A stretch of 63,966 nucleotides of DNA, filler included, from Sluysia triapertura (lineage: Eukaryota), in NCBI GenBank assembly GCA_046118255.1. It is 5 parts of 5 records of this genome, joined end to end, with 100 filler letters (N's around TTAATTAATTAA, not from the genome) between each part and the next. Parts side by side here need not be neighbours in the genome. Positions count along the whole stretch, not along the records: positions 12,065 to 30,058 come from JBJNIA010183390.1; 4 more parts are not named here. One strand, written 5' to 3'. How positions within the stretch are numbered: the first letter of the stretch is position 1; the number at the start of each line of letters is the position of its first letter. The notes beneath the pieces were generated by a model. It had not been told where the DNA came from. It saw nothing but the letters and a program-made list of their open reading frames with translations, and did not search any database. Position numbers and translations under genes: made by a program. Below, piece after piece: positions 12,100-51,604 of the stretch.

Positions 12100-12156
12100 G
12101 GGCTGATAGCTCAGTGGTAGAGCATTCGCACTGCGCATCGATCCCCGGTCAGTCCA
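12100..12156 (+). pseudogene. tRNA-Cys-derived pseudogene with internal deletion
   Basis: GGGCTGA/TCAGTCC acceptor stem, D-arm TAGCTCAGTGGTAGAGC, Cys-like TTCG..CTGC..ATCG anticodon region; variable arm and 5' half of T-arm missing. Confidence 0.75.
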
Positions 12157-12179: not shown

Positions 12180-13305
12180 TGGTTGATAATATGTTTTGTA
12201 CCTAATAGAGTTTGGCAAACCGTACCATGTAGTTTCAAAGTTGTAATTGTCGGTCTGATTCTCAAAGAGGTTTGGATGATTTGTGTGAGAGAATGTTTGG
12301 TTGTGAGATTGTGAATTGATTTGATGATGAGAGAGAATAATATAAAGATTTCAAAATTTTTACATTACAATAACAAAATAACAACAATGACAATGATGAT
12401 GATAGATATGAAAATCAATACTTAGGGTAAAGTTTTTAATTTTTATTTATTATTTTATTAAAATAATAAAGTTATTTCAATTTGAATAATTTTAATATTG
12501 TGTCATTTTTAGCTAATTTTTTAAACTATTTTTAAGGTGAGTTGATAAGAAACTCCCTATTCAATTTTTGTAAAAATATTATTTTCAAGATAATTAATTG
12601 AAAACCATTTCATGTAATTTTTGTTGAATATTACATTTAAATTGTATTTGATTTTCATTTTAAGGAGGATTGATAAGAGACTCCCTACGCAATTTTTGTT
12701 AAGACTATATTTGATTTTTAGCTATTTTTAAGATAATTAATTGAGAGACATTTCGCATAATTTTTGTTGAAGATCACATTTAAATCATATTTTATTTTCG
12801 GTTATTTTTAATGTGAATTGATTAGAAACTCCCTACGCAATTTTTTCTATCAAAATATTAAGTATTTTAACTCTAGAAATTACTGTTAAGTTGTTCTTTA
12901 AAGTTATTATTACCAAGAATTTTATTGTAGTCGTAATAAAAAAAATATTTAAATAAAATAATTACTATTAATTTTCTAGATATTTATATTGTTAGTGTCT
13001 GTTGCGTCACTCCTGGTTGTTTTGTCATAATTAGATTGTAATATAATTGATTTTTTTGTTATTTTAGTTGTTTTCAGTATTTAGTAAAGATTCTTATTGA
13101 TGATAAATTATATTACGATTTTTTGTACATCATTGTCTTAGTTTTGATTTGATTTTCAAGAACTTAAATTTGGTGTAATAGTTATTAATATTATAAAAGA
13201 ATATTACTGCCGAAATATATTCGATATACTGACTATTTAAATTATTGAGGTTCCTTTAAGCTAATCAAGTTAATATTGAGTCATAATAGCTAATAATTTT
13301 AAAGT
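12180..13305 (+). repeat. Interspersed repeat homologous to ~22700-23402, probably part of the Polinton-like family
   Basis: Shared blocks GTACCATGTA..TGTCGG..ATTCTCAA..GATTTGTGTGA.AGAATGTTT, GTTGCGTCACT.CTGGTT and TTAAATTATTGAG.TTC.TTTAAGCTAAT..TAGCTAATAATTT in the same order. Confidence 0.8.
12530..12845. repeat. Tandem array of five ~55-75 bp units, alternating two subtypes
   Basis: Type A TTGATAAGAAACTCCCTACGCAATTTTTG at ~12542, 12670, 12818; type B GATAATTAATTGA.A..CATTTC...TAATTTTTGTTGAA at ~12589, 12732. Confidence 0.85.
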
Positions 13306-13375
13306 CGCTACATCTATATAAACTAAAATTATATTTAAAATTTGTCTTGTTTTCTGGTTATACCGTTTTGCATAT

Positions 13376-14269
13376 TCACGGATGATTAATTTCATTCTCT
13401 ATCATAGAATCGTCTGGAACTTCAGTAAAACTATCATTTGTAATGTTGCTGGCATTGATAATTAAATTTTGCAAACTAAGTTCGATTCCTAATTTTGATA
13501 AAATGGATTGATTCCTGAGACATTGATCAGCAAGTCAAGCTGGATAACCAGGAACATCGATTGTGTGGCAGTATAAGCAATTTTTTCCATGGTTGAAACA
13601 TTAACCAGTTTGAGTGGATGTATGCGGGCGGAGAGCCATCTGTAGAGTTTTGTTACCATTATAGAACGACTTGAAATAGTCATCTTCTGAATTATCCTTT
13701 GGTAATGTTGTCTCTAATGATTTTTCTTTATTAGTCATGACTAATGAATTGACATCTACTATATTTGTAATAACTAATTTGTGAAATGTTAAAATTATAT
13801 TAATAGAAATTTCTATAATTTTATCTTCCTTTGTCATTATATAATTCAAAACACGAGCATGAATAGAACTAAATCGTTTAAACTTAGGTACATGAAACAG
13901 TGCAGTCAAATTTCTCGTAATAATATTTTTTACACCTAGCTTATATACTAATTTGCAAGTATTAACATGAAAAGGTACTAATTTCTTAATAGGTAATGCT
14001 TTTAATTCGCTTTTTGAACATTGACGATATCTTATGTTCAGTGATGACATTAAATAACAGAGAATATTACAATCAATACCAGTTAAATGAGTACTCATTA
14101 AATTATACGTTATAATTTTGAATAGACATTTTTTATAATGCTCATTATTGATATCAAATTTCGTTTGGATAAAATTCATTATATCTTTTAACAAAGCAGA
14201 ATAACAATTTCTTTTAATAAATATTTCATTCAAAAATTCGTTGAATTCATCTTTCAAAATTTTCTCCAT
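13376..14269 (-). pseudogene. Intronless ORF of unknown function (222 aa open) continuing in frame past two stops into a CxxHxxxCxxC zinc finger; likely virus/Polinton-like accessory gene
   Basis: ORF track 13601-14269; same frame after TAA reads CFNHGKNCLYCHTIDVPGYPA*LADQCLRNQSILSKLG...INHP*; lies just downstream of the conserved promoter-like motif at 14445-14552. Confidence 0.55.
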
Positions 14270-14444: not shown

Positions 14445-14552
14445 TGCTAGTGTTTTCTTAAACTTAAACTTATTCACTGAAAATTATCTGATGAGTCGGT
14501 TCGCCTAATATATACGCTTTATACCAAAAATGGAGACGTATTATTAGGATTT
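14445..14552 (-). promoter_or_regulatory. Conserved promoter-like motif, left arm of inverted repeat
   Basis: Minus strand CCTAATAATACGTCTCC..TTGGTATAAAGCGTATATATTAGGCGAACCGACTCATCAG; TATA-like and TCAG initiator-like words; inverted copy at 15567-15665 and third copy at 51246-51352. Confidence 0.55.
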
Positions 14553-15058
14553 AATATAATTCCTTAATTAGTGCTTAACCTAACACTCTTACTTACAAAC
14601 AGTTAAAATTGTAAAGTAAATATTTTAAAAAAGTGTTTTTATGTGTAAACAGTGTTTTTGTATTTATGTGTTGTTAATATTATTATTATTATAATTATAC
14701 TTAAATAAAAAATATAAAATTCAAAATTAAATAGAATTATTTTAATTAAAAAATTAATTTGTTTTAATATAGTAAAATATAAATAATAAAGAAAATGTTT
14801 AAATTAATTCTGGATCTATTATTAGTAACAAAGAAAAAATTATAATTATTTTAAGAAAATATTAATTTATTATTACACCAGTATAAATAGAAGGATAAAA
14901 CAAGTAAAAAATCAGAATTGGAATTAGAATTAAAATTGATAGTTAAATTGATCAAAGTTTTAGAAAAGTGATATTCTGAGGTCATTTGGATCCAGACTTA
15001 ATATTTGATTTTTCAATGTCAAAAAACTTCAAGTAATTTTTTATTGCATAAGTTTTAT

Positions 15059-15485
15059 AATATCACCTTAATAGGGATATTTAAAATATACGTAAAATCA
15101 AAGATAAATTTTTCATCAACACCTTAACGAAAGGGTTGAGTAATCTTGATTTAAAATTTGATATTTAATCAACGCTGTTGAATTATTTAATTTCCATATT
15201 GATATTATACAATTGTTTTGTAAGGATTTAGTCGATTTGTTAACTTTTATAAATAGATTATTAGAGAGTTTAACAGACTTGTGTTTTTTGTGAAAAATAA
15301 ATCGTTAATAGAACATTAAACTACTCGTATTTAACTAAATAAAACGATAAAATACTTTTCTGTAACAACACCTTAATCTAAAGAAGGGTTGTGTAAAATC
15401 ATAAAATAACATTTTACATACAACATCTCATTAAGAGAGTTGTGCAATCTATTTTTATTTAACAACACCTTAATAAAAGGGTTGT
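15059..15485 (+). repeat. Array of five bulged-A hairpins
   Basis: AATATC-A-CCT-TAAT-AGG-GATATT (15059), TCAAC-A-CCTT-AACGA-AAGG-GTTGA (15116), ACAAC-A-CCTT-AATCTAAAG-AAGG-GTTGT (15365), ACAAC-A-TCTC-ATTAA-GAGA-GTTGT (15420), ACAAC-A-CCTT-AATAA-AAGG-GTTGT (15462). Confidence 0.9.
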
Positions 15486-15566
15486 GAAACATAACTAAAA
15501 TCTAACGACTTAGATAGTCAATTTGAGTTTTATTTAGTTGGACTTTAAGTTAAGTCTTAAAATTAC

Positions 15567-15665
15567 AAAACCTAATAATACGTCTCCAAGTTTGGTATAA
15601 AGCGTATATATTAGGCGGATCAACCTATCGGATAATTTGTTAAGTATAAGAAAATACTAGCAATG
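15567..15665 (+). promoter_or_regulatory. Conserved promoter-like motif, right arm of inverted repeat
   Basis: AAAACCTAATAATACGTCTCCAAGTTTGGTATAAAGCGTATATATTAGGCGGA..ATCGGATAATTT..TAAGAAAATACTAGCA, reverse complement of 14445-14552 with few substitutions and one indel. Confidence 0.55.
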
Positions 15666-18017
15666 ATTACTAAATTTAAATTGTCAGAAATAATATTTGT
15701 TTTCAAAACATTTCTTATATCTTTTATGGTAAAAGTAATATGTGATGTATTAAGTACGATAATTTTATTAAGACATCTCTACATAAATGCGCCTTACGTT
15801 TATCAGCGAGTTTTGTGCAAAACAATAATGATTCGGTAGGACTTTGTGAACATACACAGGTTAATAGCACTTGAGCACGCTTTGATCTTATCAAAATTCA
15901 AAAATTATTTTATTATTATTATTATTATTAATTATATTGATAATATCAAACCAAACTTAATTTCACTTCATCATCTCTTCTAATATCTGAACCAATAACA
16001 GCATTTTCATGCATCCAAGCTTTCAAAACTTTTAATTTATTCTTCTAACATTAACCTTATATAAAGGATCTGGTCAGCAAAAACAGATGCTTGCTGCATC
16101 ACTTCTTCAAATTTCTTCATAGACAAAATAAAACTTGAAAAATAAAAACGATACTAACGTAACATGAATTTCTCACACCAGTAATATTTTTACAATCAAT
16201 AATATAGCAAGATGTTCTCTACCACAAATTTCTTTGCCTTTACCAGTGTACATATCAAACACCATTAATTATAAATTTCAGTGTGTGGTCTAATCAGTCA
16301 AGTAGAGAAATATACAAGAATAGGTCAACAAAAATATATTTCAGAACTCAGACGAATATATTACAGTAGTGTGTTTAATGAAATGAATTAATGCTGATAG
16401 AATATGAGATGCAATATAATCAAAAAGGAAAAAGAATATATCTTCCATAAGTTATGTTCCATAATAAATGAGTCATTCTGCAGTTTTGTTTAATTAAGGA
16501 AAATATGTATAAGTTTACTGTTTCTAATATTTTATATATTTTTGTTTAATTCTTGAATCTCTAATGTCTCGTTTAATTTGGAACAATAGTTATATTTATA
16601 TTGTGACTTTAATTTTATTTGGGAACTTATACTTATGAAATTCTGAACTTTAATAAATGTAATTAACTTACAAATAAAATTAGATAAGTATAATCATTTT
16701 TATAATTATATTACAGAATGCCAAATTAATGAAATTGTTAGATCTAATTCATACACCCCAATTACAAAAAATTAATAACAATGATTATTATTTTTATTTA
16801 TTACGAATTTTATTATAGATAATGTGAATCATAATTTGTGAAAAAAATTATTCTTTTACTCTGAACAAATTTTAACAAATATGTGGATGTATTTGAAAAT
16901 ATTTTCGAAAATATAAGAAATACTATCTTTAACATTAACAGTAAGATCATATAATTTTTTAGTTCATTAATTCATAGAATAAAAACTAAATAAAAATTAA
17001 GGAGACAATAATGTTCATCCTGAAAAATATGCAATAGGAATTGTAAAAAATACCATATCGAAGTATAGAGGGACTGAGCACGATTTTAACAATGGCTATT
17101 AAAAAATAATTTTACAAATGCATACCTTATATGAAAGACTTAGCAGACAACAAATTCATAAGATATACTTTCATCTCGCATAATTAAGTGTTTCATATTT
17201 TTCAATACATTACTTATGTATAATCTAGAATAAAATTATTAAAATTTGAAAAATGATACATTTATTTAACAAAAACACTAATATATTAGACGTGTGAATA
17301 ATACATATAGATCTGAATGCAACATCGCAAGATTTAAAACTCAAAATTAATGATTTTAAAGAGGCACGATAATCAGTAACAAAATTAATAATAAATTTTA
17401 GCCAAAATTTAAGGTGTTGCTTGTGTTTTATGCATATTGTTTGATGATTTGATATTTTTGAGATTGTATTGAAGTTTACAAGGCATATCATAGTTTGTGT
17501 TCATATTTGTTTACGACTGTGTATGATTAGTGTTTTAGTCTTGAGTTCACTATTGTGTGCCTTTCCTTAGGATATGACATGTAGTAGAGACGAACTCGAC
17601 GATTAAACGTTGCCTTGCTAAGAGTTAGAAATAAAAAACATACTCGCAAAATTGGGACCAGATATTGAATTATTATTAAGAATAAAATATTGAACATACA
17701 ATTTCGACGTAAATTGTTACATATTAAGCATTAATATATTTTTACATTTAAAACAGCACATAAATCAAAAACTTTGCTAAGTTGTTTAGTCTAATAAGCA
17801 ATAGGAGTTAAGTTCTGTTAATTAAAATAGATTTTTAAAAATTCGCTTGGCACCATCAAAAATCCTGTTAACATAACCGCTAAATATCCATAAAACAAAA
17901 CATTATAAACGTAAAAAGTTGTCATAAATGTGTTTTCGAAATTAGTAATACTAAATTTTAGTTCAAAATATTTATTATAAACCAATATCATATCAAATCA
18001 AAAACAGAAAAAATTGT

Positions 18018-18716
18018 TCACTTAATAGATTTTGCAATCAAAGACTGTATAAGTTTTCGAATTTGTTCTCTTTTTTCATTAGAGTTAACTTTATAGTTTT
18101 TAATAATATCTTTCATTTGAGGGATAGAATATTTTCCACTTAAAATGAGATTAATTATTTTTTCTGCTAATATTATGCAATACATTCCACAATCACTTGA
18201 ATTATTCTGTATTTCACAATCAAGAAGTTCAATGATAGTATTTTTAGCTTTTAAAATACAGCCTAATTTATGTGCAACATTATCAGCTTCCCTTCTAAAA
18301 TGAAATAAAACAAATTAAAATTACTTGTTAGCATAACTAGGCCCTAAGGAATCTAAATAAAAACTTGTGACAACATGACTAGATAGATAAAGGATCAGTA
18401 AAAACCAGTGAATACCACCAGCTCTTTCAACAGTATCGTCACTATTTACTGGCAAAATAATCCACCCAGTTTCTTTAACCGTTACAGATTCCAAAAATGC
18501 AGCTTCTTCTAAATCTTTTGGTGATAAAAATTTGATCAATTGAACTGACGAAGGATTACCTAAGAATATATTTTTATTAGTCAAATGGTAATGGTCAGTT
18601 AAGTATTCCATATAAAAGTGTATAACACTATCAGTAATCCATCCACCTTTAATAAGGCTATTATAATCACATTGACGCATTACTGAATCTTTGTAGCTCA
18701 AAATTATGTCACTCAT
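18018..18716 (-). CDS. SENP8: Sentrin-specific protease 8 / NEDD8-specific protease (exons 18325-18716 and 18018-18294; 222 aa)
   Basis: MSDIILSYKDS, WITDSVIHFYMEYL, GGIHW (His), YLDS (Asp), and after splicing the GT..AG intron 18295-18324, QNNSSDCGMY (Cys); frame open to TGA at 18018-18020. Confidence 0.93.
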
Positions 18717-22429: not shown

Positions 22430-23770
22430 AACATAGCAAAGTGAATATGAAATGATTGCTATGGAAGAAGAGAATCTAGAAGTGAGTTTGAAATGTTTGC
22501 GGAGTGGTTTGTTTGAGAGCTTAAACATTTTCCATAAGAAAATTGGGTGTGGATAACCAAAAATCAATTAAATTCTGAAAACTAAAATTAAATTCACTAT
22601 TTTGTATGTATGTTAACAATAATAATGATTATTATATTAATGCGAAAATTAATTTAAGTAAAAGTAGATTGAGTAGAGTAAAGGAAAATAATAGATAATC
22701 GTAAATCAATTTTTCGTGTTTTGTATTTAATAAAGTTTGACAGTCTGTACCATGTAACTGTCGGATTAATTCTCAAGGAATGTTGCACTGATTTGTGTGA
22801 CAGAATGTTTAATCAAAAAATTTGGGAATAATTGGATGATGAGAAAATTTAAAAAGGAATACCAAAAAAATTTTACATCACAACAATAACACAACAGAGT
22901 CAGCAACGATTAATAATGCAAATGAGAAGATCCATGCTTTAACTAATTTTTGAATTTATTTTATAATTAAAAATAATATTATTTTGGGGAGATTTCATTT
23001 AAATAGTTTTTGTTTTTTGAAAATTTTATTTGATTATTATTAAGAAATAAACGTGAATAATAATTAACATTTTTCTTAGTGTTTGTTGCGTCACTTCTGG
23101 TTTCTTTAGATATACTGTTATGTTCTTAGAAATATTATAAACATTATTCTTAATCTTGTTATTTAGTCATTTTTAGTATTGTTTAGTGGAGATTTATAAT
23201 AATAATTTGTATTTGATTTTTGTTTAACCAGTAAATTATTTTGTTTTTATTAATTTGATTTTTAAAAACTTAATAATCATTATTATCAGAATAAGAGAAT
23301 TACTGAAAATTTATACTTGATATAATGAGCACTTAAATTATTGAGATTCTTTTTAAGCTAATTACATTGATATTGATTTATCGTAGCTAATAATTTCTAA
23401 AGACGAAACAAATACTTCAAAAAATACAAGATAAAAGTTTTACGATTCAAGAGATCTGGTTAAATAATTCTTCGTTCCTTCGTCATTATTGGTTTATATT
23501 AACATAATCATTCGTCACGATTCAATATTTTCTGAGTGGAATTTAGCTAATTAATTCTTAGTCATTCATAAAAAATTTGAACAGTATGTCGAAGTTGTGT
23601 TTGCTTTAAAAAGAAACATATAGTTTGAATGGGTTTATGAAAAGAAAGCCAAATTTTAATCAATTCTCAATTTTACAACGTTAAAATTTTCAAATTTAGA
23701 TTGATGAAAAGATAATGAATTGCATATGAAATGACTACCACGAAAGAGGAGAATCTAGAAATGAATATCA
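22430..23770 (+). mobile_element. Decayed fragments of the Polinton-like family
   Basis: GAATATGAAATGATTGCTATGGAAGAAGAGAATC (~22443) and GCATATGAAATGACTACCACGAAAGAGGAGAATC (~23722) match the minus-strand segment 50741-50783 upstream of PolB; 22700-23402 matches 12180-13305. Confidence 0.5.
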
Positions 23771-23948: not shown

Positions 23949-26537
23949 CAGTGTTTTTTGTGCCATGTCCCACTTTAACCTTTCTAAAGTTTTTATGCCC
24001 CCTATGTAACACATATAATATTTAACATTAAAAAAGTGATTTGTTCACTTAAGAAACATAAATGATGGATTCTAGGAATAAATCACTATCAAATTGTTAA
24101 TAAAACACAGTAAGTAAATGTTCAAAACATATAATGAAAAACTGAAATTCAAATTCCAAATAATTTTAATAATGCTTTTTCTTTATTAATTTGTTACTTT
24201 AATTTAGTGAGATCCTTGCGTTTGATGCTTGCTGCAGAGAGATTTATTTGGGGTTCCAATTTGGTGAGCTTCAGTCACAAATCCCCAAGTTGTGTCTCAT
24301 GCAGCCTATTTATTTTTTCATCAGTAAATCATTTACAGACTAAATCCACATTCAGCCAAAAATGAAAATGGAAACGGTAGTAATAGTTTTCTTGCGCATT
24401 TGGTTGAGTTTGGGTATTTGATTTCCTTTTCCTCACAAAGCCATGCCATCGCACCTTTTATACTAAATAAAGTTTTAACGGAGTCATCATTTTGCAATTC
24501 GGCGAGTTCTGCATATTTGATATATCACACAAATCCCATTAACATTGGCTGCATCATCCATGTTGGGTTATCAATTTGCTTTAAATCTAAAAATCTTTCT
24601 TTTAAATTATTTAAATGATTTACAATAACAAGTAAAGCGGTATCAGTTACTTCACAATTTTGAAGCTAGTGGAACTGTTCAAAGTTTTTGTTGTTAATAT
24701 GTTTCTGACATAACTCAATATTGGTAATGAAACCAAATATCTTCGCTTTTGCATCGACAAGAGTTTTATTTGTCCTTTGAAATTGCTTATTTAATATATT
24801 TAGTTTTTCAAAGATATCGGCTAAATAACTCATAAAGGCTTTACCATCGATTGTTAATAGATGCTTCATTTCTGCTTCAAGCAGTTTCCTTTAGATAGCC
24901 ACTTTACTTCAGTATGAAGTAAAAGCCTCACATGGTCTTTAGCTTTAAAAGACGCTCACATTTGGCACTAGCTTTAATAACTTTAACACATTTATTACAG
25001 TATGTAGTACTTCGTTTAGAACATGTGAGATGTTTTTAGCTATCAAGATTTGCCTATGAATAACACAATACACAAGAATCATTTCTGGATTCGCATCTTT
25101 CATCAATTTTCAGCAGCCATTTTTCTTGCCCATCACATTAGGAGCACCATTTGCAGCACAAGATATTATATTTTTCATTGATATATCATTGACATCTAAG
25201 TAGTTTTAGCTTAATAAATATATCTTTGGAAGTAGCTGTGTTTTCTAATCTTTCGCAGAACAACATTTCTTCTGCAAAATGCCTTTATCAATATATCTTA
25301 CGTAAGTTATCAATACTGCCTCACTATCTCTCAAAGTTAATTCATCCATATGCACTGAGAATTTTCTTGTTTTCAGCTTTTCAACAAGTTGTTTTTCAAT
25401 ATCTTGACTCATTTCGTCTATTCTTCTGCTAACAGCATTTTTACTGAGTGGCACAGCTTCTACATCTTTGTCATCTTTTTCAAGAACGGTTTTAAGAAAT
25501 GCTGATATTGACGGTTTTATTAAATTCTCTCATATAGTGTGATTTTTTCCAGTTTTGGCGATGAATAAAGAAATTTGATAACTAGCATCAAGAACACGGT
25601 TATTGGTTGAAGTATGGGCAGTAAATAGCAACTTTATTGTTCTTTTTTCAAAGTTTTCTTTCAATGTTTTAAAGTAATTCAAATCTGAATTAATATGAGC
25701 ACTATGTTTCGCTTTCAAATGCGCCTCAAGACGACCTCGTTTCATTGATTCGTTACTCAAGCATTGCTGGCACAAAAGACAAAAAGGAACCCAAATTTTA
25801 AATATTCCTCCGAATATTGACAAGTTTTTTCTTGCTTGCACTACTCATTTTATTATGAGTTATATGAAATAAAAATAAAATCAATAAAAAATAATATTAA
25901 AATGTGTTAAAATTAATTAATTGTGACATAGAGCAAACGTATACTAAAATGCATATTTATATAAAACATTTACTACACTGCTACCGCAAATCAAAAGATA
26001 CCTATATTTTTTCTATTTGAAAAAATTCTCTGCAATGTTATGCTTCTAAAATTAAAATAAATAAAAATACTTACAAATTATATCTATATAATAAATAAGT
26101 ATATTTATAAAAACAACGAGCTTTTACTACAGTTTTGACAGACACTTCTTTCAGATTAATACCAACAGAATGATGTGAAACACTACATGTGTTGCGGCTA
26201 TAGGCCAATTAGGAGCGAACAACTGTGTTGTTTAGCAAATTTCTTGGTTGGCCGGGTTTACGCCTCCCCTCCCGGCAGACAGCACACTCCGCGGTGAACC
26301 CCGGACCAAGTTTATTCGACGATGCCATTCAACCAGTTAATATTTTGGTCTCGTCAAACGAAATTATTTAAGAATTTGCTGTTTTTTGCTAAATTTGGCA
26401 CCGATATCTAGCATTGCATTTAAATGGTCGGAGAGAAAGGGCTAAAGTTGTGTCGAGTCAATTTTCAAATTAAACCCTTCTGCAGGACACCCGAGCCTCT
26501 GCCCTGTGGGGCGCGTGCTAGACGTTGGGAAACATTC
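23949..26537 (-). mobile_element. hAT transposon, Buster/Charlie (ZBED5/SCAND3-like) type, frameshifted transposase ~24200-25850
   Basis: BED finger CLLCQQCLSNESMK..LEAHLKAKH, PLSKNAVSRRIDEMSQDI, FSVHMDE, YLADIFEKLNILN; termini CAGTGTTT (23949, after TTCTAAAG) and GTTGGGAAACATTC (26524-26537). Confidence 0.92.
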
Positions 26538-42666: not shown

Positions 42667-42786
42667 AGTTAGCCTTTTTACGGTCTAACTTTCAATAAAA
42701 AATATTTTAAATTAGCATTTACGGTCTAATTATGCAAACTTTCTTTTACATTTTATGATATTTAGCTAGCCTTATTACGGTCTAGC
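42667..42786 (-). repeat. Array of three bulged-A hairpins
   Basis: Minus strand AGTTAG-A-CCGT-AAA-AAGG-CTAACT (42667-42690), AATTAG-A-CCGTAAATG-CTAATT (42710-42731), GCTAG-A-CCGT-AAT-AAGG-CTAGC (42765-42786). Confidence 0.85.
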
Positions 42787-51487: not shown

Positions 51488-51604
51488 ACTAACTTTCTTA
51501 AGGTCTAGTTCCATAAAAATTATAAATAACACAAGCCTTCTTAAGGTCTTGTACAAAAATACTTCAAAGATTTTAATTAATTACTGTAGCCTTCTTAAGG
51601 TCCA
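51488..51604 (-). repeat. Array of three bulged-A hairpins
   Basis: Minus strand ACTAG-A-CCTT-AAG-AAAG-TTAGT (51488-51509), ACAAG-A-CCTT-AAG-AAGG-CTTGT (51531-51552), TGG-A-CCTT-AAG-AAGG-CTA (51587-51604). Confidence 0.85.

What the first reader, a model, noticed from the sequence alone, without database searches (positions are those of the whole stretch)
15059..15485. Array of covarying bulged-A hairpins: a structure-selected cis element of a Polinton-like virus family
Seen: five units share the architecture outer stem - unpaired A - inner stem - short loop. The paired bases change together (outer AATATC/GATATT, TCAAC/GTTGA, ACAAC/GTTGT; inner CCTT/AAGG versus TCTC/GAGA) while the bulged A is invariant and the spacers are unrelated. 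Six more units occur in two other arrays (42667-42786, 51488-51604). Knowledge: single extrahelical bases in hairpins are the recognition feature of phage MS2/PP7 operators, integron attC sites and HUH-transposase substrates; baculovirus hr palindrome arrays act as origins and enhancers. Inference: these are protein-binding ssDNA or RNA hairpins (origin, packaging or recombination signals) of an endogenous PolB-encoding element. I know of no described Polinton feature like this.
Basis: partly seen in the sequence, partly recalled or inferred. Interest (0 to 1): 0.9.

Follow-up and report, generated by a model that had tools for sequence, protein, structure and literature searches.

The report
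Hairpin repeat array inside inverted-repeat element
The five bulged-A hairpins are real, keep their base pairing through matched changes on both sides, and sit inside a 1.2 kb non-coding unit bounded by inverted repeats (probably a small non-autonomous transposon of an AT-rich arthropod-like genome), but nothing in the available DNA ties them to a Polinton-like virus.

Summary
Five same-strand hairpins lie at 15059-15485, each with a 5-6 bp outer stem, an unpaired A, a 3-4 bp inner stem and a 4-9 nt loop. An unbiased scan finds only seven comparable hairpins in the 18 kb piece; five are this array. All 44 scored stem pairs are Watson-Crick. Five of nine stem positions change on both sides and none on one side only. 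Stems are 84% identical between units; flanks about 53%.

The array lies inside a 1218-bp non-coding unit (14445-15662) bounded by ~108-nt inverted repeats, and each arm holds its own bulged hairpin. The piece has no PolB, capsid, ATPase or integrase. The only protease hit is a cellular SENP8-like gene. The other neighbours are an orphan ORF and a decayed hAT transposon closest to spider copies. Motif scans of viral, metagenome and prokaryote collections gave only isolated hits, none with a second unit.

Best reading: a palindrome-bearing internal repeat array of a MITE-like element, resembling pearl/DTC84/DINE-1/HINE elements, with hairpins acting on single-stranded DNA. Neutral template switching is the main rival. 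Copy number, element ends and superfamily could not be tested.

The parts
14445..15662 (+). Whole non-coding unit bounded by inverted repeats (1218 bp); a probable non-autonomous, MITE-like element that carries the hairpin array
   Evidence: Inverted repeat found (I1). No Pfam hit on its open frames. As one strand it folds into a panhandle in which the unit hairpins persist.
14445..14552 (+). Left arm of the inverted repeat (~108 nt)
   Evidence: 78% identity over 108 nt; the 72-nt core is 88% complementary; alignment.
14504..14548 (+). Hairpin inside the left arm: 12-bp stem with one unpaired base and a ~20-nt loop
   Evidence: z = -2.3.
14674..14757 (.). Microsatellite-like low-complexity stretch between the left arm and the array
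   Evidence: periods 3, 6, 7 and 14.
15059..15081 (+). Unit U1: 6-bp outer stem, unpaired A, 3-bp inner stem, 4-nt loop
   Evidence: (35.7 bits).
15116..15139 (+). Unit U2: outer stem TCAAC/GTTGA, unpaired A, inner stem CCTT/AAGG, 5-nt loop
   Evidence: (44.9 bits).
15169..15181 (+). Truncated unit: U2's outer stem around a 3-nt loop, with no bulge and no inner stem
   Evidence: z = -4.4; weak model match (14.2 bits).
15365..15392 (+). Unit U3: outer stem ACAAC/GTTGT, unpaired A, inner stem CCTT/AAGG, 9-nt loop
   Evidence: (42.7 bits).
15420..15443 (+). Unit U4: same outer stem, unpaired A, inner stem TCTC/GAGA (two pairs changed on both sides), 5-nt loop
   Evidence: D1; 42.0 bits.
15462..15485 (+). 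Unit U5: outer stem ACAAC/GTTGT, unpaired A, inner stem CCTT/AAGG, 5-nt loop
   Evidence: (49.2 bits).
15571..15615 (+). Hairpin inside the right arm, the mirror of the left-arm hairpin
   Evidence: z = -2.4.
15567..15662 (-). Right arm of the inverted repeat

Best explanation
The array is the internal core-repeat block of a small, non-coding element bounded by inverted repeats. The element is most likely a non-autonomous DNA transposon of the tandem-repeat-containing MITE kind, sitting in intergenic DNA of an AT-rich, probably arachnid or other arthropod, genome. A repeat of roughly 45-57 nt was duplicated in tandem. Its flanks have since decayed almost to background, while the 23-28-nt quasi-palindromic core kept its ability to fold into a 9-bp hairpin with one unpaired A. 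Every stem pair is strictly Watson-Crick with no wobble pairs, and the inverted-repeat arms carry a bulged hairpin of their own. I therefore infer that the hairpins act at the DNA level. In this reading they form on single-stranded DNA exposed while the element is copied or moved, and they serve as recognition or pausing sites for a trans-acting element protein, as the terminal palindromes of rolling-circle Helitron/Helentron elements are thought to do. The palindromes would also make the array prone to gaining and losing units. Shown here: the hairpins, the covariation, the contrast between core and flank conservation, the inverted repeats, and the lack of coding capacity or viral genes. Inferred: mobility, DNA rather than RNA as the folded molecule, and protein recognition.
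For: Hairpin clustering is far above chance. Pairing is 100%, with 5 double-sided and 0 single-sided changes. Stems are 84% identical between units U2-U5, against about 53% for the flanks and 31% for random sequence. A unit model scores 36-49 bits on the + strand and at most 16.5 bits on the - strand, so the units share one polarity. Inverted repeats of ~108 nt bound a 1218-bp unit with no protein-family hit. Each arm folds into its own bulged hairpin. A microsatellite-like stretch lies beside the repeats. This modular layout matches the published pearl/DTC84/DINE-1 elements, whose core repeats carry a palindrome in a segment of reduced variability (PMC3879986). It also resembles the HINE elements of a mite, whose subterminal inverted repeats are themselves palindromic (PMC4067079).
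Against: Only one copy is visible. No target-site duplication or exact ends could be fixed: the candidate duplications are at chance level. No second copy was found in any collection I could search, and those collections probably do not hold the host genome. The inverted repeats are much longer than the 12-15 bp subterminal repeats of HINEs. No transposase or Rep gene is in the piece. With five or six units, some sharing ancestry (U2 and the truncated unit share one compensated pair), there may be as few as four independent double changes. U1's outer stem is A/T-only apart from its closing C-G pair, and such short palindromes are common in 25% GC DNA. A mutational process could produce the same pattern without selection.
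Confidence: 0.45

Rival explanations
1. Neutral palindromic minisatellite. The units are a decaying tandem repeat with no function. The matched changes on both stem sides come from replication template switching, which copies one arm of a quasi-palindrome from the other in a single event and so restores pairing without selection.
For: Template switching is documented to create perfect stems and to produce multi-base compensatory changes (PMC8794818). All pairs are strict Watson-Crick with no wobble intermediates, as copying between arms would give. U4's two double changes lie in one 4-bp arm and could reflect a single event (D1). There is only one locus and no evidence of expression.
Against: Copying between arms should sooner or later erase the unpaired A, yet it is kept in all five full units. 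These include U1, whose outer stem differs. Stems are far better conserved than flanks (84% against 53%), which a purely neutral repeat does not predict. The truncated unit shows that loss does occur, so the intact units need explaining.
Confidence: 0.28
2. One reading: the hairpins are cis signals (origin, packaging or recombination) of an endogenous Polinton-like, PolB-encoding virus family. This 1.2 kb unit would then be a fragment or miniature derivative of such an element.
For: Polintons have long terminal inverted repeats, and this unit has ~108-nt ones.
Against: No PolB, capsid, packaging ATPase or integrase domain occurs in any of the 50 open frames of at least 50 aa. The one protease-like ORF is a SENP8 orthologue-like cellular gene. 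No convincing 6-bp target duplication was found. The hairpin and inverted-repeat motifs gave only isolated matches in 2.9 million viral contigs, and no contig holds a second unit. The scan's program states that the other pieces are unrelated.
Confidence: 0.07
3. Structured RNA. The array is transcribed from the + strand, and the bulged-A hairpins are RNA operators bound by a protein, in the manner of MS2/PP7 coat-protein sites.
For: All units share one strand polarity. An unpaired A lies on the 5' side, 3-4 bp below the loop. Covariation is present.
Against: No Rfam family matches at E up to 1. Loops vary in length (4-9 nt) and in sequence, whereas known operator hairpins need a defined loop. 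There are no G-U pairs among the 44 cells. No transcript evidence is available.
Confidence: 0.1
4. Regulatory inverted duplication. The two inverted-repeat arms are duplicated promoter or 5' regions of divergently transcribed genes. The hairpin units would be double-stranded palindromic binding sites acting as an enhancer, in the manner of baculovirus hr repeats.
For: Each arm contains outward-facing TATA-like sequence, and an ATG lies at or within about ten bases of each arm's outer end. The orphan ORF at 13601-14269 lies 176 nt beyond the left arm and reads outward.
Against: The ORFs beyond the two arms share no similarity, and the one on the right has no family hit. The ATG on the left opens only a very short frame (sequence). 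Double-sided stem changes are not expected for sites read as double-stranded DNA by a sequence-specific protein.
Confidence: 0.1

Closest known systems
Tandem-repeat-containing MITEs of the pearl / DTC84 / DINE-1 type (PMC3879986)
   Same: Non-coding. Flanking modules hold inverted repeats. An internal array of up to about five core repeats runs in one orientation, with microsatellite-like sequence beside the array. Each core repeat carries a palindrome in its least variable segment.
   Different: The units here are about 45-57 nt, against 156 nt in DTC84. The palindrome is a bulged 9-bp hairpin that covaries, not a fixed 12-nt palindrome. The inverted repeats are ~108 nt, not short. Copy number, ends and target duplication are unknown.
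Helentron-associated interspersed elements (HINEs) and Helitron2, rolling-circle elements (PMC4067079)
   Same: Palindromes at both ends. Subterminal inverted repeats that are themselves palindromic, described from a mite. Optional central tandem repeats. Mobility thought to depend on hairpins in single-stranded DNA.
   Different: HINE subterminal repeats are 12-15 bp and lie 2-4 nt from the 5' end. The defining 3' palindrome, the TT insertion site and a Rep/helicase partner could not be shown here.
Baculovirus hr regions
   Same: Arrays of imperfect palindromes separated by unrelated or weakly related spacers.
   Different: hr palindromes are read as double-stranded DNA in a viral genome (from general knowledge, not tested here). 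This locus is gene-poor cellular DNA with a host gene and a transposon remnant, and its stems covary.
MS2/PP7 coat-protein operator hairpins
   Same: A single unpaired purine on the 5' side of the stem, a few pairs below the loop.
   Different: The loops here are not conserved. There is no Rfam match and no evidence of transcription. The context is eukaryotic and genomic.
Polinton/Maverick terminal inverted repeats
   Same: Inverted repeats of about 100 nt or more bounding an element.
   Different: No Polinton gene is present in the piece, no 6-bp duplication was found, and no hairpin arrays are described for Polintons.

Membership tests
Polinton/Maverick or Polinton-like virus | Protein-primed PolB, integrase, capsid proteins, packaging ATPase and adenain-like protease between the terminal repeats | tested here: not met
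   Pfam scan of all 50 open frames of at least 50 aa gave only Peptidase_C48. That ORF aligns with human SENP8 from residue 1 (E = 1e-13). Its best relatives are cellular SENP8 proteins at 40% identity or less.
Polinton/Maverick or Polinton-like virus | 6-bp target-site duplication flanking the terminal inverted repeats | tested here: inconclusive
   The one perfect 6-mer candidate does not abut the left repeat arm, and about one such match is expected by chance in the space searched.
Polinton/Maverick or Polinton-like virus | The same cis motif present in related viral genomes | tested here: not met
   Hairpin pattern: 51 contigs with one match each. Inverted-repeat cores: 0 and 1 matches. 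No fetched locus has a second unit by the covariance model.
Tandem-repeat-containing MITE (pearl/DTC84/DINE-1 type) | Non-coding unit whose flanking modules hold inverted repeats | tested here: met
   no protein-family hits inside the unit.
Tandem-repeat-containing MITE (pearl/DTC84/DINE-1 type) | Internal array of core repeats in one orientation, with a palindrome in the least variable part of each repeat | tested here: met
   (stems 84% identical, flanks 53%).
Tandem-repeat-containing MITE (pearl/DTC84/DINE-1 type) | Microsatellite segment joined to one end of the array | tested here: inconclusive
   Low-complexity repeats lie at 14674-14757, but about 300 nt from the first unit, and such runs are common in 25% GC DNA.
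Tandem-repeat-containing MITE (pearl/DTC84/DINE-1 type) | High-copy dispersed family with defined ends and a target-site signature | not testable with these tools
   The host genome is in none of the searchable collections. There is one copy in the piece.
Helentron-associated HINE / Helitron2 | Palindromic subterminal inverted repeats of 12-15 bp close to the 5' end | tested here: inconclusive
   Each arm has a palindromic core, but the inverted similarity runs about 60 nt further outward.
Helentron-associated HINE / Helitron2 | Short palindrome 8-35 bp from the 3' end, insertion into TT, no target duplication | tested here: inconclusive
   An imperfect palindrome lies at 15686-15722, just beyond the right arm (I8, 78%). 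This is weak in A/T-rich DNA, and the element ends are not defined.
Helentron-associated HINE / Helitron2 | Autonomous partner encoding Rep/helicase with the same ends | not testable with these tools
   None in the piece (Pfam scans as above); the genome is not available.
MS2/PP7-type RNA operator | Unpaired A at a fixed distance from a loop of conserved length and sequence | tested here: not met
   The bulge is present, but loops are 4, 5, 9, 5 and 5 nt with different sequences. No Rfam match.
Any Rfam RNA family | Match to a curated covariance model | tested here: not met
   the only hit in the piece at E up to 1 is a sub-threshold tRNA-like fragment at 12100-12156.

The most novel reading that the evidence does not exclude
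The bulged-A hairpin is the conserved cis signal of a previously undescribed family of mobile elements in arthropod genomes. It would be read as single-stranded DNA (or RNA) by an element-encoded protein, be kept by selection for shape and not sequence, and possibly be shared between small non-autonomous units like this one and larger autonomous partners (rolling-circle or Polinton-like) elsewhere in the genome.
Probability: 0.15. Interest if true: 0.65.

Novelty: new variant of a known kind. Interest (0 to 1): 0.35.

Why it matters
If a genome-wide family confirms it, this would be a clear case of shape-selected hairpins inside a eukaryotic transposon-borne repeat array. That would give a testable handle on why MITE-like and Helentron-like elements so often carry palindrome-bearing internal repeats, and on how satellite-like arrays arise from them. 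As it stands, it is one locus in intergenic, transposon-rich DNA. The more striking claim, a new cis element of Polinton-like viruses, has no support in the available sequence.

Tried and rejected
- **Ciliate genetic code.** Table 6 opens 97 frames in all phases, which is noise. A 222-aa standard-code ORF and a SENP8 match show that the standard code applies.
- **Polinton protease.** The Peptidase_C48 hit proved to be a SENP8-like cellular gene.
- **Relatives of the element.**
  - The hairpin pattern in viral contigs gave 51 singletons.
  - The inverted-repeat cores gave 0 and 1 matches in viral contigs and 0 in metagenomes.
  - The hairpin pattern in metagenomes gave 18 singletons. Eight come from one project's ~50% GC contigs and have no other similarity to the piece.
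  - The inverted-repeat core in prokaryote genomes gave one chance hit in a Flagellimonas genome.
  - The covariance model found no second unit in any fetched locus.
- **Orphan ORF 13601-14269.** It has no homologues and no PDB relative. The single-sequence structure model was too poor to search with (pLDDT 42).
- **Host identification.** The SENP8-like ORF has no close relative. The hAT fragment points to spiders, but the fetched Trichonephila locus shares only the hAT element.
- **Target-site duplication.** The search gave only chance-level candidates.
- **Other RNA classes.** Hammerhead or other ribozymes, tRNA-like and snoRNA readings are not supported by Rfam or ARAGORN.
- **CRISPR-like reading.** I considered this (palindromic repeats with unrelated spacers) and dropped it, because the context is eukaryotic and the repeats are variable.

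Full report
**Observation**

The region 15059-15485 holds five hairpin units on the + strand. They are U1 15059-15081, U2 15116-15139, U3 15365-15392, U4 15420-15443 and U5 15462-15485. Folded alone as single strands, each adopts the same shape: a 5-6 bp outer stem, one unpaired A on the 5' side, a 3-4 bp inner stem and a 4-9 nt loop (z-scores -1.9 to -3.6).

A degenerate pattern built on units U2-U5 hits four times where 0.00 is expected, and nowhere else in the piece. The half-sites also occur only in the array, apart from one one-mismatch match of the 5' half at 17411-17421.

The scan found seven. Five are this array, and all five have a 5' A bulge. First-order Markov simulations gave a mean of 1.4 per 18 kb and never more than two within 450 nt.

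Four corrections apply:
- U1's inner stem is 3 bp.
- A sixth, truncated unit at 15169-15181 keeps U2's outer stem around a 3-nt loop.
- A 180-nt gap splits the array into two groups.
- The spacers are not wholly unrelated (see below).

**Covariation**

I scored nine pairs on an alignment of the five units. All 44 scorable cells are Watson-Crick. Five pairs change on both sides and none on one side only. No shuffle out of 500 reaches this, and sliding the 3' partner by 1-3 columns drops pairing to 40-58%.

Caveats apply. There are only five sequences. U2 and the truncated unit share one compensated pair, so it arose once. U4's two double changes lie in one arm. U1's outer stem is A/T-only apart from the closing C-G pair.

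A separate line of evidence is the contrast between core and flanks. Stem and bulge columns are 84% identical among U2-U5 (74% among all five). The 20 nt on either side are 52-54% identical, against 31% for random sequence of this composition. So the units are old duplicates of a repeat of roughly 45-57 nt. Its flanks have nearly decayed while the hairpin survived. If the stems had diverged as the flanks have, intact pairing in all five units would be very unlikely; this is my inference from those figures, not a computed probability.

A covariance model of the unit scores 36-49 bits on the five units. It scores at most 16.5 bits on the opposite strand or anywhere else in the piece. The units therefore share one polarity, and the piece holds no further copies.

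**Immediate context**

The array lies inside a 1218-bp block, 14445-15662, bounded by inverted repeats of about 108 nt. The repeats are 78% identical over 108 nt, with a 72-nt core at 88%. The similarity is truly inverted, because the loop of the arm hairpin is also reversed.

Each arm folds into its own hairpin at 14504-14548 and 15571-15615. This is a 12-bp stem with one unpaired base and a ~20-nt loop. As one strand, the whole block folds into a panhandle in which the unit hairpins persist.

The block has no protein-family hit. It contains microsatellite-like runs at 14674-14757. I could not fix its exact ends or a target-site duplication, because the candidates are at chance level.

**Wider context**

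The piece is 25% G+C and gene-poor, and it uses the standard code. It contains four features of note:
- **An orphan 222-aa ORF, 13601-14269, minus strand.** It has no homologues, no PDB relative and no usable structure model.
- **A SENP8/DEN1-like gene, 18021-18716, minus strand.** Its first coding block aligns with human SENP8 from residue 1 (E = 1e-13). Its second block carries the end of the Peptidase_C48 domain. The best relatives in 1.8 billion proteins are cellular SENP8 proteins of a copepod, a parasitoid wasp and a protist, at 40% identity or less. I searched the two coding blocks separately and did not join them.
- **A decayed hAT transposon of the ZBED5/SCAND3/FAM200 type, 23957-26471, minus strand.** One fragment is 88% identical in protein, and the element 84% in DNA, to copies in the spider Trichonephila clavipes. 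It has ten in-frame stops in the 503-codon homologous frame.
- **A diverged dispersed repeat next to a tRNA-like fragment**.

All 50 open frames of at least 50 aa were scanned against Pfam. No PolB, capsid, ATPase or integrase domain was found. None of the contigs looked human.

**Relatives elsewhere**

The hairpin pattern gave 51 single matches in 2.9 million viral contigs. The two inverted-repeat cores gave 0 and 1. By my estimate, not a computation, this is about what chance gives for patterns of this length. In metagenome contigs the inverted-repeat core gave nothing. The hairpin pattern gave 18 single matches there. Eight are from one project's ~50% G+C contigs, which share nothing else with the piece. 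The prokaryote genome collection gave one chance hit. The covariance model found no second unit in any fetched locus.

The host genome is evidently not in the collections I can search: its own ORFs are absent from the protein collection.

**What it most likely is**

The layout is inverted-repeat-bearing flanks, a microsatellite-like stretch, then up to about five same-orientation core repeats, each with a palindrome in its least variable part. This is the published layout of the tandem-repeat-containing MITEs of the pearl/DTC84/DINE-1 group (PMC3879986). Those elements have been tied to rolling-circle Helentrons as non-autonomous HINEs. In a mite, HINE subterminal inverted repeats are themselves palindromic (PMC4067079).

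I therefore read the block as a non-autonomous, MITE-like element, and the hairpins as its core repeats. All pairs are strict Watson-Crick, and the arms carry a bulged hairpin too. From this I infer that the structures matter on single-stranded DNA, as recognition or pausing sites for a trans-acting element protein, and that they make the array prone to gaining and losing units.

Membership in the HINE/Helentron group is not established. The arms are far longer than HINE subterminal repeats, and the 3' palindrome, TT target and Rep partner could not be shown.

**Rivals**

1. **Neutral palindromic minisatellite.** Its matched changes would come from replication template switching, which is known to create and repair stems in single events (PMC8794818). 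The strict Watson-Crick pairing fits this. The invariant unpaired A and the contrast between core and flank conservation argue against it.
Only the existence of inverted repeats speaks for it. The gene content and the viral scans speak against it.
3. **An RNA operator array.** Polarity and the bulge fit. The variable loops, the lack of G-U pairs and the lack of any Rfam match do not.
4. **An inverted duplication of promoter regions with enhancer-like palindromes.** TATA-like sequence and nearby ATGs fit weakly. Double-sided stem changes are not what double-stranded protein sites predict.

**Verdict**

This is a real and unusually tidy hairpin array whose shape appears to be maintained. It sits in a small non-coding element bounded by inverted repeats. 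I rate it a new variant of a known kind of transposon-borne repeat. The Polinton link is unsupported, and function and mobility are inferred, not shown.

While reasoning, I briefly recalled from memory a few residues of human SENP8 and some terminal motifs of transposon superfamilies. The SENP8 call rests, and the element comparisons rest on the cited papers. All DNA patterns sent to tools were copied from the window.

Noticed in passing
window 12100-12156: A tRNA-like fragment: acceptor and D arm plus the 3' acceptor end. Rfam tRNA scores 24.4 bits, below the gathering score, and ARAGORN calls no gene. It is possibly the head of a tRNA-derived SINE.
   Followed up: partly
window 12580-12882; 12192-13307 versus 22717-23405: A 143-nt tandem repeat of about two copies lies inside a ~1.1 kb segment. 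That segment recurs in direct orientation about 10 kb away at 67-69% identity, so it is an unclassified dispersed repeat.
   Followed up: partly
window 13601-14269 (-): A 222-aa ORF, far too long to be chance in 25% G+C DNA. It has no homologue in the protein collection, no PDB relative, no solid Pfam hit and a poor structure model. It starts 176 nt beyond the left inverted-repeat arm and reads away from it.
   Followed up: partly
window 18021-18716 (-): A SENP8/DEN1-like NEDD8 protease gene in two coding blocks. It is only 40% identical or less to any protein in the 1.8-billion-protein library. The blocks were searched separately and not joined.
   Followed up: yes
window 23957-26471 (-): A decayed hAT transposon of the ZBED5/SCAND3/FAM200 type. 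It is 84% identical in DNA to a copy in Trichonephila clavipes (BMAU01019232.1). It has ten in-frame stops in the 503-codon homologous frame, and no frameshift between the five largest fragments. It suggests an arachnid-like host or horizontal spread.
   Followed up: partly
window 14504-14548 and 15571-15615: Each inverted-repeat arm contains its own 12-bp hairpin with one unpaired base and a ~20-nt loop. This is also the best conserved part of the arms.
   Followed up: yes
window 15686-15722: An imperfect palindrome (78%) lies 24-60 nt beyond the right arm. It is reminiscent of the 3' palindrome of Helentron-type elements, but it is weak in A/T-rich DNA (I8).
   Followed up: no
L055, L058, L060, L062, L063, L066, L068, L070: Eight metagenome contigs from one accession series (JAABU...) carry an identical 24-nt match to unit U5. 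They are ~50% G+C and share nothing else with the piece. Presumably this is one conserved sequence of an unrelated organism, sampled repeatedly.
   Followed up: partly
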